Shown: positions 14,045-20,100 of the stretch, piece by piece | Layout of the letters: each line of letters opens with the position of its first letter | Position numbering within the stretch: position 1 is the stretch's first letter | Assembly: GCF_023055435.1 (NCBI RefSeq) | Contig: NW_025963780.1 | Coordinates: 39,370,001 to 39,434,000, forward strand | Length of the DNA: 64,000 nucleotides | Source: Haliotis rufescens | Lineage: Eukaryota | Reading direction: 5' to 3' | The notes under the pieces: generated by a model | What the model was told of the DNA's origin: nothing | Databases searched by the model: none | What the model saw: the letters and a program-made list of their open reading frames with translations, nothing else | Program-made: the position numbers and the translations under genes

Positions 14045-14183
14045 TCATCTCTGGTAGTAGTAGTTCTGGTCGTTGCCATCAGGTCGCAGTCCGAAAGAGG
14101 ACTCCAGGCTGCCCACGATGGTGCTGAAGTTGGGTCGGCTGCCTGGAGACTCGGACCAACACTCCTGCATCAGCCGATAGTGA
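14045..14183 (-). CDS. RTK-like exon 23 (subdomain XI, Tyr tail, stop)
   Basis: [22 protein letters not shown]...DQNYYYQR*. Confidence 0.92.
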
Positions 14184-17100
14184 CTGAAAACATCGAGACA
14201 TCACTTTATTACATATTGCCGAGGGTCGCCGTCAGCCATGACTTTACAGACATTACCACGACTGTTGTACAGTAGTACTACTCCGATTGTTCCATATTAC
14301 CGTGACTGTTCTTCATTGCTGTGTTCTACTCTACTACGTTCTACATAACTGTGGCGTTCCATATTACTACGACTGCCCTATATAACTATGACTGTTACAC
14401 CTTACTGTGTCTGTTACACCTTACTGTGTCTGTTACACCTAACTGTCTGTTACAGATTACTGTGTCTGTTACACCTTATTATGAGTGTTACATATTATTG
14501 ATACCGTTACACCTAACTGAGTCTGCATTACTGTGACGGTTCTACATTACTATAAATGTTCAACAACGACTATAACTGTTCTGCATTATTATGACTGTTC
14601 TACATTATTGTGACTGTTCTATATTACTGTGACTGTTCTATATTACTGTAAGTTCTATATTACTGTAACTGTTCTATATTACTGTAACTGCACTTCATTA
14701 CTAGAACGGTTCTATATTACTGTAACTCTTCTATATTACTATGACTGTTCTATATTACCGTAACTGTTCTATATTACTGCAACTGTTTTATATTGTTGTA
14801 ACTGCTTTATATTACTGTAACTATTCTATATTGCTGTAACTGTTTTATATTACTATGACTGTTCTATATTACTGTAACTGTTCTATATTACTGTAACTGT
14901 TCTATATTACTGTAACTGCACTTCATTACTAGAACGGTTCTATATTACTGTAACTGTTCTATATTACTGTAACTATTCTATATTGCTGTAACTGTTTTAT
15001 ATTACTATGACTGTTCTATATTACTGTAACTGTTCTATATTACTGTAACTGCACTTCATTACTAGAACGGTTCTATATTACTGTAACTGTTCTATATTAC
15101 TGTAACTATTCTATATTGCTGTAACTCTATATATTACTATGACTGTTCTATATTACTGTAACTGTTCTATATTGCTGTAAGTGTTCTATATTACTGTAAG
15201 TGTTCTATACTACTGTAAGTGTTTTATACTACTGTAACAGTTACAGCAATATAGAAAGTAAAAGTAATGAGATTCGCTGTGCAGAGTTGCATCCCTTGGG
15301 CACGCCAGAAATCTATAATTGTTTGTTCGAATCCCGGTTCGCCCCGATTATGTTTCTAGGTTTGTCAGCACCATACCTGTGCTCGTGGGCGGTAAACGTC
15401 TGAGACCTGCATCCCTTGGGCTTTCCTCACATTAAGCTGACAAGCCGTGATAATACTGTTAAAAGCGGAGTTAAACCCAACACGCTCACTCACTCTAAAC
15501 TTTTCTATAATGACGTAAACATTTGCCTGCGACATTTGCGAACATTACAGATTTTAAATGTGAATAATGTTAAAGTATAAACTGGCATGCATTTACAGTT
15601 TGACACAATGTGTGATCAACAAAAGTGTGACAGAAACGTTAATATTCTTCATACTCGGTTACGATATTCGTACCATACGAGGATATATATTTCTATGAAT
15701 ACACAATGCCATTTAGTGAGTGAGTGAGTGAGTATGGTTTTACGCCGCTTTTAGCAATATTCCAGCAATATCACGGCGGGGGACACCAGAAATGGGCTTC
15801 ACACATTGTACCCATGTCGGGAATCGAACCCGGGTCTTCGACGTGACGAGCGAACGCTTTAACCACTAGGCTACCCGACCGCCCCAAAATGCCATTTAGA
15901 AAGTGGTCAAATGTAACAAATGTTATATATTTGGGATAACGCTTTCTTAGTCAAGTACAGATTCTCGTACTTTTTTGGGTTGAGTCCCGTCCGGGATTCG
16001 AACCCACACTTGCAATCGCCAAAAGTACGGGATCTTGACTACCAGTTGTCGGACTTTCATTTTTTGTGGAAGCCTCGGTGGCTGAGTGGGTTAGATCTCT
16101 GACTTTGTGTGCTGGCGATTAGGTGCCTCACTCTGGCAAGTGTGGGTTCGAATCCTGGACGGGACTCAACCCAAAAAAGTACGAGAATCTGTACTTTACT
16201 AAGAAAGTGTTATCCCAAATATAACAATAGTTAGATATATATTTCGCTGAAACCTGATTTTTTTCATGTTAATCTTAGTGACACCCAACCATGGTATTAT
16301 GGTTAAGAAAGTGAAAATGTTTTTCTTTATTTTCTAGAAAGCCCTGGGTACTTCTATAAGAAGATCCGTTTCTAATTAACTTCAGAATTCGTAAAACTGG
16401 TGTAAGCATTAAAATTGGTACAATTTTGTTGGTAATACAAACTTTTCTGGGAGTCAAAATGAAGCTTTGTTTTAAAAAGTCAACATTCCATTTGAGTGAT
16501 GATATGATAGATTCATTATACGTCTTCTCTTTATCTTACGCTACATTTGTAAATACAGAGGGTTCAGTAAGGAAGGTTTGCCTTTTCCCAATCTAGATTG
16601 ACATGTCAATAAAGTATGTTTAAATCAAGTAGTCGATACATTTCAAATGAAATAGCACTGGATTTCAAGTCTTCTGGACATTTTAAAATTATTAAAGAGT
16701 TTCCGAAGTATAACGACAATTCATATTGAAATTTACATGATTAAATGTATATTTGTCTTGACATCTATTGATGAACAATCAAAGTTTACTCATTCCGGAA
16801 AATTTGAAGTAGGACGTCCGTCTAACTTGACATTGTACTATAAAAAGAATACCTGCACAAACATTTACTTGGTATTACTTACATGTCCTCCGCATACTCC
16901 GGCCTTGACAGCCTGTGCCCGCCCTTGACCTTCGTTGGGATGTCACGACCTCTGATGTCAGAGTAAGGACTCTCACCTAGGGAGGACAGAAACTGGATTT
17001 AAGATTGTCTGTACCTCCTTATCTTTCTGTTGGTGAAGTAAGTTTTGTCGGTTTTGTGAGTCATACAGTCGGCAATGGCAGCTAAACAGTCGGCTGTGAT

Positions 17101-20100
17101 AGGTATGGAGTCGTTAATGGTAGTTATATAGACGATTAGAAATGCAGGCTGATAACACAATCGTTCCTGATTTTAATATATCTAGTTGTGGTGGTATTCA
17201 AGTCGGTAATGGTTGTTTAAGAGGAGGAAATGGTAGTGACCTAGACACTGCCTGAAACAGCCAGACACCTCCCCGTGCTAAAGATGGGTCACTCTCCCTG
17301 TTAGACTCTACAAATTACATTAACTGAACCAGACTCATCTAGACACAACCAGTGTCATCCAAATACAACCAGACACATCCAGACACAACCGGAATCAGCT
17401 AGTCAAAGCACATCTATCCATGCTGAAGATCTCTCAGATAGCCACGCCATAGGACCACGCGTCACTCTCTCAACAGGCGGCATTAAGAGAACCTGACTAA
17501 TCTAGACACAACCAAAGTCATCGTGACACAGTCGGAACCAGACATAACTATGTATATATACCCGGACACAACCACACCCATCCCAACTCAACCCGATAAA
17601 GCCAGACACCACCCACACTGAAAATCTCCCAGTCACTTTCCTCGTTGGACTCAACAGGAGAAATCAAAAGAACCAGATTGATCCACACACATCCAAGTTC
17701 ATCCAGATGCAACCAGCCATATCTAGACACAACCAGAAACAGCAAGACCCAGCCAAACACCTACCCATGCTGAAGATCTCCCAGATTGTCACACCATAGG
17801 ACCACACGTCACTCTTCTCGTTAGCATCCTTGAAGGACCTCAGACACTCTGGGGCTGTCCATTTGATGGGGATGCGGTCCTAAATCGCAAACAAGAAATA
17901 TAAGTAAAATACCTAAGGGGTATGATTGAAGGTTATTGAAAACATGATACTATTGTCGACATTTTAGGAAACATGAATATTCCAGACCAGTTTCTATATG
18001 AACACATAGACACTACAACTTTATGTTACTAATGAACCAATGTGATTATGTTGAGACAGAAACCAGGATGCATCATGCTGCACACTTACCCCTTTGGCAT
18101 CATCAGCAGACTCATCAGCCTTGCTTGGGCCACATCCAGTCACCTTGATCTCCAGCAGGAAGGTCAGCAAACAGTTACGTGCAGCCAATTTACGGTGAAC
18201 GATCTGAAGAAACACCACAACAGCACTCGAAAATATTCCAAAGATATACCGACTCAATAGATCATTAACGTCGATCCATGCAATTTGGATACGATGATAT
18301 GCTAGCAACAAAGTCCCCGAGCCTGTCCACCCAATTCATTTGATCACCTCCGGAGACAAGCATTGGATACTTTTACCCAGAACATCTTTACCCCACTAAC
18401 TCCCCTCTCCCTCATCCGGTCGAATCCTCAGGTTAGAGGAATATTGTTGTATAAAATCGCACTACAGCGTGTTGGGTAGCCATGGCACACATACTACATA
18501 CACACACCTTCTTGGACGCCAGATACTCCATGGCACGAGCGATGTCCAGGGCGAAGTTCTGTATCCTGTCCAGGGTGTCCTCATTGATGTTTGATCTCTG
18601 CTTGGTCAGCCACTTGTCCAGTTGGCCAATCTCGCAGTACTCCAGCACCATGACGGGGCCCACTGGGTGAGATCAAAGGAAGACTCAGACACATGTTATA
18701 CAGACAGACACCAAACACACACACATATACATATACAACACACACACACACACACACACGCACGGACGCACGCACGCACGCACGCACGCACACACGCACG
18801 CAACCCGATGCACGTGAGTTCCGTGAAAATTGAAATGCACATGCATTCCCCCATTTCTTGCCCTATACAAATCCACCCAGATCGGATAACATTCATTCGT
18901 AATTGAATTGCTGTCACATGCATGTTATTCTGGCAGACACCAAACAGATATACATGTGTCTTTGTTCTTCTGAAATTGTTACTTCCAAATATTCTTCTAG
19001 CTTACATTCCAGTAGTTATATGGACCACTTGATATACGAAACCAAAGGTCGTGTTTTGAAAATTATGATGCTGATTTCTACTCACGCGCCTCGTTCTCCA
19101 TGACAGCCCCAAGGAAGCCCAACAGGTTCGTGTGTTTGCCCATCTGAGTGGCAGCAAAGTTGATCTTAGCCAGCATCAGCAAGATGTCGTCCTGACTCTC
19201 CCTCACTGGGGAAACACAGATCGACATATTGATTGAATATCAGATGAACTTATTTCACAGTAACGAACAACACCAACAATACAGAACAAAACATTTGAAT
19301 ATATTTCAGAGTGTTATTTTACACGATTTACCTTTGAGAACCTTCGCAACCACATTTTGGACGTTCTTGGGTGTCTCCATCCACTTGGCAGTGTAGATCC
19401 TGGCAAACTTGCCGGTTGCGATGACCTCGGTAAGGCTGATGTCCTCGGGGGGAATGTACCAGGGTTCCCCAAGGTCCATGCTGCCGTAGATGTAGATGTC
19501 GTCGTCCTTGTTGTATGTCGTGTTCTGATGCAAAGTTGGAATGTTGTATAAACCCACCATACTTTAAAGTTTAGGAAAATTGCTATAACACAAAAATCTG
19601 TTCTCACTTTGGTTTCGAAACTGAAATCTATTTTATATTTGGTAATATATAAGAAAATGTATTCAGTAAAAATATCCAAGGCGGTAGGATGCATTCACAT
19701 CTCTAATCAAATGAGAGTAGTGCAACTATGTATGACAAATACTAATCTTACATCAAACGCCCATCTACTCCTGCGGTCGTTCCGTTTGAAGCCCGTTGTT
19801 TGTCCTGTTGAGGTCGCAACACGGGGTCGTTCTCTGTAAGTGTTTCGACGCCCGAGGAGTCCAGCCAATAACCCAAGTTTGAACAGAATCAGGCCCACAA
19901 TAACGAGTATGAGAGCGAGCAGCAACAACATTCCTGGACAAAACAAAACAAAAATCGCTCATTACGTTCAGCTGCTATGAATCTTGTGTATAAATTTGTA
20001 ATTCTTCTTACATACAAAAATTCCCAAACAAACTACTGGCAAGCAAACTTGATTGTTGTGAAACAAAATGCAAGTATGTTTTATGAGAGATGATATGAAT

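What the first reader, a model, noticed from the sequence alone, without database searches (positions are those of the whole stretch)
14045..19524. Intact receptor with a catalytically dead tyrosine kinase domain
Seen: the spliced kinase has G-loop IATGKFA (vs LGxGxFG), alphaC LAKINF (Glu replaced by Lys), catalytic loop HRKLAARN (Asp replaced by Lys) and VTGCG in place of DFG. The beta3 Lys, APE, SDVWSYG and CW..RP motifs and all splice phases are intact. Established: loss of both the HRD Asp and the DFG Asp defines pseudokinases such as PTK7 and EphB6. Inference: the gene is maintained as a non-catalytic receptor or scaffold. I do not recognise this architecture as PTK7, ROR, RYK, ErbB3 or EphB6.
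Basis: partly seen in the sequence, partly recalled or inferred. Interest (0 to 1): 0.85.

Follow-up and report, generated by a model that had tools for sequence, protein, structure and literature searches.

The report
Conserved dead-kinase receptor family in molluscs
This abalone gene encodes an intact, expressed cell-surface receptor whose tyrosine-kinase domain lost its catalytic residues long ago, and it belongs to a large, previously undescribed mollusc-wide family in which every member examined carries the same "dead" motifs under strong purifying selection.

Summary
The gene lies on the minus strand at 14045-44693. It has 23 coding exons and matches Haliotis rufescens RefSeq LOC124142642 (1244 aa, "uncharacterized protein") residue for residue.

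The kinase domain reads:
- IATGKFA in the glycine loop
- VVAKVLK, so the beta3 Lys is kept
- LAKINF, with no alphaC Glu
- HRKLAARN in the catalytic loop
- GCG in place of DFG
- APE, SDVWSYG and CW..RP intact

Contigs from four sequencing studies lack the introns and join the exons at GT..AG sites.

This is not a private decay. In 71 of 71 scorable gastropod and bivalve relatives the HRD Asp is Lys, Arg or His. The DFG site is GFG in 64, GCG in 6 and GLG in 1. The replacement residues are themselves invariant or nearly so.

Kinase-domain dN/dS against two tandem paralogues is 0.14-0.16, lower than for the ectodomain (0.38). The family is one well-supported clade near FGFR, PDGFR and RET. It is none of the eight known receptor pseudokinase types.

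It is best read as a non-catalytic signalling receptor. Conserved tyrosine motifs (YxY near the membrane, YYY at the C-terminus) sit in segments predicted to be disordered, and are probably phosphorylated by another kinase. I class it as a new variant of a known kind. The scan has not noted this family on other DNA.

The parts
14045..44693 (-). Whole coding span of the receptor gene (H. rufescens LOC124142642 isoform X1, 1244 aa, 23 coding exons)
   Evidence: All 1244 residues of P0186 are found letter for letter in minus-strand frames.
44622..44693 (-). First coding exon: signal peptide (aa 1-24)
   Evidence: Hydrophobic N-terminus read directly.
35088..37333 (-). Four exons encoding the Cys-rich EMI-like module (CC.GW motif) and EGF-like repeats (aa 25-152)
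   Evidence: Exon map. Weak EGF_2 hit, E 4e-4, below Pfam's cutoff. Paralogues hit EGF_TEN / EGF_PEAR1L.
22297..34820 (-). Eight exons of the about 620-aa ectodomain region with no Pfam assignment (aa 154-771). Includes the 229-codon exon at 24098-24784.
   Evidence: AF2 model of the large exon has pLDDT 82.8: an Ig-like beta-sandwich plus an irregular part. No PDB match at E<=1e-3. Relatives weakly hit bacterial Ig-like Big_3_2.
21897..22157 (-). Fibronectin type III exon (aa 773-859)
   Evidence: PF00041, E 7e-9 and E 9e-7 on P0186.
19752..20184 (-). Two exons (20137-20184 and 19752-19934) giving the stalk, the transmembrane helix, the basic stop-transfer and the start of the juxtamembrane region (aa 860-935)
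   Evidence: Direct reading. The 19752-19934 exon is present in RNA contigs of four runs.
19332..19524 (-). Kinase exon K1. Juxtamembrane D-I-Y-I-Y-G (Tyr codons 19492-19494 and 19486-19488), G-loop IATGKFA (19402-19422), beta3 Lys (19342-19344).
   Evidence: RNA contig piece 19332-19524.
19086..19205 (-). Kinase exon K2: alphaC helix LAKINF (19156-19170) with no Glu, then the [12 protein letters not shown] strand
   Evidence: 120 nt are left for it in the 1470-nt RNA contig.
18508..18662 (-). Kinase exon K3: hinge (LEYCE.G) and alphaD-alphaE
   Evidence: PF07714, E 3e-8. RNA joints.
18090..18203 (-). Kinase exon K4. Catalytic loop [10 protein letters not shown] (Lys replacing the Asp at 18189-18191), GCG replacing DFG (18129-18137), acidic Tyr-free activation segment.
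   Evidence: RNA joints 17878/18089 and 18203/18508.
17765..17879 (-). Kinase exon K5: IKWTAPE and SDVWSYG
   Evidence: PF07714, E 5e-14. RNA joints.
16883..16976 (-). Kinase exon K6 (alphaF-alphaG region)
14045..14183 (-). Kinase exon K7: CW..SRP motif, C-terminal tail with Y-Y-Y (14054-14062), stop codon (14045-14047)

Best explanation
The gene encodes a single-pass receptor: signal peptide, EMI-like and EGF modules, about 620 aa of Ig-like and unassigned ectodomain, FN3, a TM helix and a tyrosine-kinase fold.

The kinase domain is a pseudokinase. Shown here:
- It belongs to a monophyletic mollusc family derived from the FGFR/PDGFR/RET-type branch.
- In that family the catalytic Asp became Lys or Arg, the Mg-binding DFG Asp became Gly, two of the three G-loop glycines were lost, the alphaC Glu was lost and the activation-loop tyrosines were lost.
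- These replacements are now themselves invariant.
- The domain is under stronger purifying selection than the ectodomain.
- The gene is transcribed and correctly spliced.

Inferred from this:
- The protein cannot transfer phosphate.
- It signals non-catalytically. The folded pseudokinase would act as a dimerisation or allosteric module.
- The conserved juxtamembrane [DE]-[IL]-Y-x-Y motif resembles the PDGFR/KIT Src-docking Y-x-Y. With the C-terminal Y-Y-Y cluster it would act as docking sites phosphorylated in trans by another tyrosine kinase.
- No family member is catalytically competent, so that kinase must come from outside the family.

I put about 0.85 on 'selectively maintained, catalytically inactive receptor of a distinct family'. 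I put about 0.4 on the specific trans-phosphorylated scaffold mechanism.
For: **Motifs and exons.**

**Expression and splicing.** Intron-less contigs appear in four runs from four studies, with GT..AG joints at every kinase intron. One contig spans all exons. A second contig matches a paralogue reading V-A-G-C-G, and 3 of its 5 changes in those codons are silent.

**Family-wide motifs.** The HRD Asp position is K, R or H in 71 of 71 sequences. The DFG site is GFG in 64, GCG in 6 and GLG in 1.

**Column counts in 46 sequences.**
- G-loop: Gly 46, Phe 45, Ala 46.
- Beta3 Lys 46.
- AlphaC Lys 45.
- His and Asn of the catalytic loop 46 each.
- Gly at the DFG-Asp site 46, followed by Pro 46.
- APE 46.
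- Juxtamembrane Tyr 45 and 39.
- Tail Tyr 43 and 39.

**Own genome.** At least 20 K4-like exons; all 11 that were inspected read H-R-K.

**Selection.** dN/dS of the kinase domain is 0.143 and 0.157 against two tandem paralogues, whose splice sites are all kept. The ectodomain gives 0.38.

**Activation segment.** Only 1 of 72 family members has a Tyr, against 58 of 58 other tyrosine kinases. Median acidic residues are 6 against 3.

**Phylogeny.** The mollusc clade has SH-aLRT support 100 and a stem length of 1.01, in a polytomy with FGFR and VEGFR/PDGFR.

**Structure.** The AF2 model of a family member's intracellular region has a core pLDDT above 90. The YxY and YYY segments score below 50, which suggests disorder. 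The best structural matches are FGFR1-4, CSF1R, KIT, RET and PDGFRA.

**Juxtamembrane similarity.** The layout resembles PDGFRalpha (E-Y-I-Y-V-D-P ... W-E-F-P-R-D).

**Known pseudokinases.** None of the eight human receptor pseudokinases has this motif combination (Table 2 of PMC13259870).
Against: - No biochemical data exist. Absence of activity is inferred from sequence.
- The beta3 Lys and the catalytic-loop Asn are retained, so nucleotide binding cannot be excluded.
- No partner kinase, ligand or phosphorylation site has been observed.
- The YxY/PDGFR resemblance is a short motif with different spacing (8 against 11 residues to the conserved Trp). Its Src-docking role is recalled knowledge, not tested here.
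- The run type 'RNA' is the tool's guess. The intron-less GT..AG joints are the evidence for RNA.
- dN/dS was computed between paralogues by Nei-Gojobori counts summed exon by exon, not on orthologue coding sequences with a codon model.
Confidence: 0.8

Rival explanations
1. It is an atypical but active kinase, or another enzyme on the kinase fold. It would use non-canonical residues, as WNK, CASK or SelO-type enzymes do. For example, the retained beta3 Lys and catalytic-loop Asn could work together with the new basic residues.
For: The beta3 Lys (46/46), the catalytic-loop His and Asn (46/46) and a structured core (pLDDT above 90) are retained. The replacement motifs are invariant, which shows the pocket is constrained rather than eroding.
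Against: Both the catalytic base and the metal-binding Asp are gone. So are the alphaC Glu, two G-loop glycines and the activation-loop Tyr, which makes four of five core motifs changed. No precedent is known to me for a tyrosine kinase active with Lys or Arg at the HRD-Asp site.
Confidence: 0.07
2. It is a recently decayed paralogue, a private allele or an assembly or annotation artefact, with no maintained function.
For: The gene sits in a tandem cluster of paralogues, where redundant copies often decay.
Against: The same motifs occur in H. asinina and H. cracherodii orthologues and in gastropods and bivalves generally. dN/dS is 0.14-0.16. The frame is open across 23 exons. Spliced transcripts are seen in four studies.
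Confidence: 0.02
3. It is a divergent member of an already known receptor family: a true FGFR or Tie/angiopoietin receptor, as some database names say, or one of PTK7, RYK, ROR, ErbB3, EphA10, EphB6 or STYK1.
For: Automatic names of relatives include 'fibroblast growth factor receptor', 'angiopoietin-1 receptor-like', 'FER-like' and 'kita'. FGFRs are the best structural matches. EphA10 also has GFG.
Against: There are no Ig domains or any other defining ectodomain module. Bit scores drop sharply from family members (212 or more) to any other tyrosine kinase (159 or less). The clade is separate with 100% support. The motif pattern differs from all eight human receptor pseudokinases.
Confidence: 0.04
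4. It is essentially an adhesion, decoy or ligand-sink receptor. The ectodomain does the work and the kinase fold is only a structural cytoplasmic plug, with no signalling role for the tyrosine motifs.
For: The large modular ectodomain (EMI/EGF/Ig-like/FN3) is of the kind seen in adhesion and engulfment receptors. The ecto-module also occurs without any kinase in Lingula, crinoids and amphioxus.
Against: The intracellular domain is more constrained than the ectodomain (0.14 against 0.38). Short Tyr motifs in disordered segments are conserved between gastropods and bivalves. That is hard to explain without an intracellular interaction.
Confidence: 0.07

Closest known systems
[quoted passage not shown]
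   Same: All are single-pass receptors with a folded tyrosine-kinase domain lacking catalytic residues, conserved by selection, and signalling through partners. EphA10 shares GFG at the DFG site and also lacks the HRD Asp (HRG).
   Different: The ectodomain is unrelated (EMI-like/EGF, unassigned Ig-like region, FN3). The motif pattern is unique: xxGxFA, Lys kept, no alphaC Glu, HR[K/R], G[F/C]G, so four of five motifs are changed. The Asp is replaced by a basic residue. Every member of the family is dead, and the family is expanded to at least 20 loci per genome.
FGFR / PDGFR-KIT-CSF1R / RET receptor tyrosine kinases
   Same: These are the nearest active kinases by structure (Foldseek TM about 0.8-0.89, about 31-33% identity) and in the tree. 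The juxtamembrane layout is similar: acidic-Y-x-Y ... W-x-x-P-x-[DE]-x-L. The GKH.N..LLGA strand is shared.
   Different: There are no Ig domains and no kinase insert. The catalytic Asp residues, alphaC Glu and activation-loop tyrosines are absent. The names 'FGFR' given to homologues, such as H. diversicolor A0A2L0NG74, are misnomers.
C. elegans KIN-16 family pair OLD-1 / FLOR-1 (PMC10523662)
   Same: A lineage-expanded, otherwise uncharacterised RTK family that includes a receptor pseudokinase acting in signalling.
   Different: In the nematode an active family member pairs with the pseudokinase. Here no active member was found. The similarity is functional analogy only, not homology, and it was taken from the abstract only.
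Hemichordate receptors (Ptychodera flava, Glandiceps talaboti, Saccoglossus; e.g. P0120, P0125, P0142)
   Same: They share the unassigned ecto-module (E about 1e-10 to 1e-12 to the window's large exon). They read HRK in the catalytic loop and lack the DFG Asp (SFA/SFS).
   Different: The alphaC Glu is kept and the G-loop is deleted rather than substituted. Their kinase domains retrieve FGFR and RET next, not the mollusc family. A joint clade has only 78.9 support, so common descent of the dead state is unresolved.

Membership tests
Receptor tyrosine pseudokinase (general class) | Single-pass membrane receptor carrying a tyrosine-kinase fold | tested here: met
   Signal peptide, TM helix and PF07714 at E 8e-65 on the encoded protein. 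All seven exons hit PF07714 colinearly. A family member folds as a kinase with core pLDDT above 90.
Receptor tyrosine pseudokinase (general class) | Substitution of at least one of the beta3 Lys, the HRD Asp or the DFG Asp | tested here: met
   HRD Asp to Lys and DFG Asp to Gly. The Lys is retained.
Receptor tyrosine pseudokinase (general class) | Lack of phosphotransferase activity | not testable with these tools
   Needs an in vitro kinase assay.
FGFR | Two or three Ig-like ectodomains with an acid box, and an active HRD/DFG kinase with activation-loop YY | tested here: not met
   No Ig Pfam domain in P0186 or in the exons. HRK/GCG. No Tyr in the activation segment. Separate clade.
Tie / angiopoietin receptor | Ig + 3 EGF + Ig + 3 FN3 ectodomain and an active kinase | tested here: not met
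   Only one FN3 and weak EGF hits, no Ig, and a dead kinase. No Tie entry among the best 60 PDB sequence hits or the 50 Foldseek rows shown.
PTK7 / CCK4 | Seven Ig domains; HKD retained, ALG for DFG | tested here: not met
   No Ig domains. The motifs differ from Table 2 of PMC13259870.
RYK / ROR | WIF domain (RYK), or Ig + Frizzled CRD + Kringle (ROR); HKD retained, DNA or DLG | tested here: not met
   None of these domains was found. The motifs differ.
ErbB3 / HER3 | Receptor L and furin-like domains; HRN with DFG intact | tested here: not met
   Domains absent. DFG is lost here.
EphA10 / EphB6 | Ephrin-binding domain, two FN3, SAM domain; beta3 Lys lost (VAVH / VAIQ) | tested here: not met
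   No ephrin-binding or SAM domain. The beta3 Lys is kept. No Eph kinase among the best 60 PDB sequence hits or the 50 Foldseek rows shown.
Mollusc HR[K/R]-GFG receptor family (defined here) | EMI-like/EGF + unassigned ecto-module + FN3 + TM + kinase fold, with xxG[KRH]FA, AKINF, HR[KR]LAARN, G[FC]GP, juxtamembrane YxY and a YYY tail | tested here: met
   All features are present in the window gene. The gene nests in the clade, which has 100% support.

The most novel reading that the evidence does not exclude
The family may be a ninth class of receptor pseudokinase that predates the protostome-deuterostome split, since hemichordate receptors share the ecto-module and HRK.

Its active site has undergone charge reversal. 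Lys or Arg sits at the catalytic-Asp site, Lys at the alphaC-Glu site, and the beta3 Lys is kept. This would create a basic pocket. The invariably acidic, tyrosine-free activation segment could occupy that pocket, or a phospho-ligand could bind there. Either would lock the domain in one conformation.

The expanded tandem arrays would then act as a diversified recognition-receptor repertoire, immune or settlement-related, that recruits Src-family kinases through the YxY motif.
Probability: 0.15. Interest if true: 0.8.

Novelty: new variant of a known kind. Interest (0 to 1): 0.6.

Why it matters
Receptor pseudokinases are few, with eight in humans, and each has taught something about kinase-independent signalling. 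This would be an additional, independent class in three respects:
- it is older than the gastropod-bivalve split;
- it has the most thoroughly remodelled active site of any receptor pseudokinase in the comparison table;
- no member is catalytically competent, and the family is amplified in tandem arrays in molluscs.

It is a natural test case for what a kinase fold is kept for after catalysis is lost.

It also corrects database names. Homologues are labelled FGFR, angiopoietin receptor, FER-like or KIT. One homologue, called 'FGFR', was reported as closely related to growth in Haliotis diversicolor. That claim comes from a 2015 thesis cited in PMC11275868. If this is the same gene as the deposited 'FGFR' homologue P0191, a link I did not check, the growth association concerns a pseudokinase and not an FGF receptor. 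This matters for aquaculture genetics and for mollusc kinome counts.

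Tried and rejected
**Rule on joined exons.** That step was left out. Exons were searched one by one by reference. For whole-protein work I used, by id, the database protein P0186 that one search returned. One search shows it is identical to the exons.

**ESM Atlas.** The kinase part gave only generic tyrosine-kinase clusters (JAK2, Cad96Ca, DDR). This was uninformative.

**Foldseek on the ectodomain exon.** The AF2 model of the large exon gave no match at E<=1e-3, only weak Ig, FN3 and PKD-like rows. 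I did not pursue pdb_via_wide because the ectodomain is the subject of another note.

**Brachiopod member.** The Lingula hit P0055 shares the ecto-module but has no kinase domain, so it is not evidence for the pseudokinase family outside molluscs.

**Hemichordate link.** A search from a hemichordate kinase domain returned FGFR and RET next, not the mollusc family. A common origin of the two dead groups is therefore neither shown nor rejected (support 78.9).

**Literature.** Seven searches covered pseudokinase with mollusc, lophotrochozoa, hemichordate and gastropod, plus kinome, oyster kinome and H. diversicolor FGFR. None found a description of this family. The oyster kinome paper does not use the word pseudokinase and reports 'Fer' as its largest TK subfamily. 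The library lacks most subscription journals, so this is not proof of absence.

**Read data limits.** The variant table lists only the best-supported differences. I could not confirm base by base that every run carries the AAA Lys codon. Orthologues and paralogues do carry it.

Full report
**What is there**

The window is part of Haliotis rufescens contig C2 (39,370,001-39,434,000). P0186 is 'uncharacterized protein LOC124142642 isoform X1', 1244 aa.

A six-residue word walk shows that all 1244 residues of P0186 are encoded letter for letter on the minus strand. There are 23 exons, from 44693 (signal peptide) down to 14048, with the stop codon at 14045-14047.

Exon pieces were searched by reference, and the database protein was used by its id.

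**The observation**

Translation of the minus strand gives seven kinase exons:

| Exon | Coordinates |
|---|---|
| K1 | 19332-19524 |
| K2 | 19086-19205 |
| K3 | 18508-18662 |
| K4 | 18090-18203 |
| K5 | 17765-17879 |
| K6 | 16883-16976 |
| K7 | 14048-14183 |

Each exon hits Pfam PF07714 in colinear order across profile positions 2-258. The whole protein scores E 8e-65.

- IATGKFA for GxGxxG.
- VVAKVLK, with the beta3 Lys kept.
- LAKINF in alphaC, with no acidic residue in the helix.
- [10 protein letters not shown], with Lys for the catalytic Asp.
- KVTGCGP, with G-C-G for D-F-G.
- Intact IKWTAPE, SDVWSYG and CW..SRP.

The residue aligned with the alphaC Glu depends on the alignment. It is Lys against EGFR, Leu against a Src/Abl ancestor and Ala in MAFFT. 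The Glu is missing in all of them.

**Expression and splice junctions**

About 0.17 of the sampled words of the 5.9-kb stretch occur in 14 runs, which is roughly the exonic share. I laid four of those runs, from four studies and two organism labels. Their contigs skip every kinase intron with GT..AG ends on the minus strand.

One 1470-nt contig runs without interruption from the 3' end through K7-K1 into the TM exon. It leaves exactly 120 nt for K2. The tool only guesses that these runs are RNA; the intron-less GT..AG joints are the evidence.

A second, deeper contig in one run differs by about 10% and reads V-A-G-C-G. Three of its five changes in those codons are silent. This matches the tandem paralogues.

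**Not a private decay but a family trait**

*In the same genome.* The K4 exon finds at least 20 further exons in this genome. They lie in arrays on C2 at 20.75-21.73 Mb, 39.48-39.51 Mb and 45.67-46.01 Mb, and on other contigs. All 11 of those that I inspected read H-R-K, followed by GFG or GCG.

*In other molluscs.* An exhaustive HMMER search with the 267-aa open frame (24080-24880) around the large ectodomain exon found 309 relatives. A kinase-region search from the H. asinina orthologue found the family in many genera:
- Gastropods: Haliotis, Gigantopelta, Patella, Littorina, Nucella, Babylonia, Pomacea, Batillaria.
- Bivalves: Crassostrea, Ostrea, Saccostrea, Pinctada, Mytilus, Pecten, Mizuhopecten, Ylistrum, Argopecten, Mya, Mercenaria, Mactra, Dreissena, Sinanodonta, Potamilus, Solemya.

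*Motif counts.* In 73 representatives, the HRD-Asp position is K, R or H in all 71 that could be scored. The DFG site is GFG in 64, GCG in 6 (a Haliotis subclade that includes this gene) and GLG in 1. None has HRD or DFG.

*The replacements are fixed.* In a 46-sequence alignment:

| Position | Count of 46 |
|---|---|
| G-loop middle Gly | 46 |
| G-loop Ala (replacing the third Gly) | 46 |
| Beta3 Lys | 46 |
| AlphaC Lys | 45 |
| Gly at the DFG-Asp site | 46 |
| Pro after GFG | 46 |
| Catalytic-loop His | 46 |
| Catalytic-loop Asn | 46 |
| APE | 46 |

*Activation segment.* It has lost its tyrosines: 1 of 72 family members has one, against 58 of 58 other tyrosine kinases. It is also acid-rich, with a median of 6 acidic residues against 3.

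**Selection**

Two tandem paralogues lie 94 and 126 kb away. They keep all seven kinase exons with AG/GT splice sites and no gaps.

Nei-Gojobori counts, summed exon by exon, give dN/dS of 0.143 and 0.157 for the kinase domain. Five ectodomain exons against the nearer relative give 0.38. The 'dead' domain is thus the more constrained part of the protein.

Identity varies strongly from exon to exon, and dS differs between the two halves of the gene. This hints at gene conversion among the paralogues.

**Where it belongs**

- Family members score 212 bits or more against the kinase region. The next tyrosine kinases (MET/RON, Fer, PDGFR, FGFR, VEGFR) score 159 bits or less, at 28-45% identity over their local alignments.
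- The best solved-structure sequence hits are generic: EGFR, a Src/Abl ancestor, RON and FGFR1-3.
- A maximum-likelihood tree puts the mollusc family in one clade. It has SH-aLRT support 100 and a stem length of 1.01, in a polytomy with FGFR, VEGFR/PDGFR and a hemichordate group.
- I modelled the intracellular region of a Patella member (P0177) with AF2. The kinase core is confident, with 234 residues at pLDDT 90 or above.
- In the same model the juxtamembrane YxY segment, the middle of the activation loop and the YYY tail fall below 50.
- Its best structural matches are FGFR1-4, CSF1R, KIT, RET and PDGFRA. No known receptor pseudokinase appears in the 50 rows shown.
- The ectodomain has one FN3, weak EGF and EMI-like Cys patterns, and about 620 aa without a Pfam family.
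- The largest ectodomain exon models as an Ig-like sandwich plus an irregular part, with no clear PDB match.
- Table 2 of PMC13259870 lists the motifs of EphA10, EphB6, HER3, PTK7, ROR1/2, RYK and STYK1. None combines a degraded G-loop, a lost alphaC Glu, HR[K/R] and GFG.

**Beyond molluscs**

Hemichordate receptors (Ptychodera, Glandiceps, Saccoglossus) carry the same ecto-module and a kinase domain reading HRK plus SFA or SFS. Their kinase domains retrieve FGFR and RET next, not the mollusc family. A joint clade has only 78.9 support. A single origin is possible but not shown.

The ecto-module alone, without a kinase, occurs in Lingula, crinoids and amphioxus.

**How it most likely works**

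*Shown.* An intact, expressed, strongly constrained receptor whose kinase fold lacks the catalytic base, the metal-binding Asp, the Lys-Glu salt-bridge partner and the activation-loop phospho-acceptors.

*Inferred.*
- There is no phosphotransfer.
- The fold is kept as an interaction or allosteric module.
- Two short, conserved tyrosine motifs in predicted disordered segments serve as docking sites phosphorylated in trans. These are [DE]-[IL]-Y-x-Y upstream of the conserved Trp, and Y-Y-Y at the C-terminus.
- The juxtamembrane motif resembles the PDGFR/KIT Y-x-Y. From my own knowledge, that motif docks Src-family kinases.
- No active sibling was found, so the phosphorylating kinase must be from outside the family.

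The ligand is unknown.

**Prior knowledge**

Database names are 'uncharacterized protein' or misleading automatic labels: FGFR, angiopoietin-1 receptor-like, FER-like and kita.

A homologue from H. diversicolor (P0191, A0A2L0NG74; HRK/GFG) is deposited as 'Fibroblast growth factor receptor'. [quoted passage not shown] I did not verify that the thesis gene is P0191.

The oyster kinome paper does not mention pseudokinases. Seven full-text searches found no description of this family. The library is incomplete, so a description elsewhere cannot be excluded.

**Verdict**

It extends from one gene to a mollusc-wide, tandemly expanded family of receptor pseudokinases, distinct from the known classes. 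This is a new variant of a known kind. Interest is moderate to high for pseudokinase and invertebrate signalling research. It does not change any paradigm.

Noticed in passing
window 27140-32146: A roughly 5-kb satellite of about 31-bp units, with higher-order periods of 62, 93 and 291 bp (about 160 copies, 71-77% matches). It fills the intron between the exons at 26623-26844 and 32478-32615. It creates long spurious open frames on the minus strand and strong GC/AT skew.
   Followed up: partly
window 15228-16217 (intron between K7 and K6): An interspersed repeat with very high summed contig depth in all four runs (10^5-10^6), with many loose ends. It contains a sub-threshold tRNA-like match at 15809-15880 on the minus strand (26.8 bits against a gathering score of 29). 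It is probably a tRNA-derived SINE that is abundant in transcripts.
   Followed up: partly
window 20450-21077, minus strand: Open frames resembling a Tc1/mariner-type transposase lie inside the intron between the FN3 exon and the stalk exon. The resemblance was judged by eye only; no family search was run.
   Followed up: no
G000:C2:39481941 and 39513978 (outside the window; loci L013-L016): Two tandem paralogues on the same strand. Identity to the window gene varies strongly by exon (K5 96.6% but K7 80% for one copy). dS differs between the halves of the gene (0.49 for the kinase exons, 0.28 for the ectodomain exons). This suggests patchy gene conversion.
   Followed up: partly
G000:C2 20.75-21.73 Mb: A large array of K4-like exons, all reading HRK followed by GFG. 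That position falls inside this array, so the receptor may be a family member.
   Followed up: no
window 18698-18807 (intron K2-K3): A GT/GTGC-rich microsatellite. The reads tool skipped it as a repeat.
   Followed up: no
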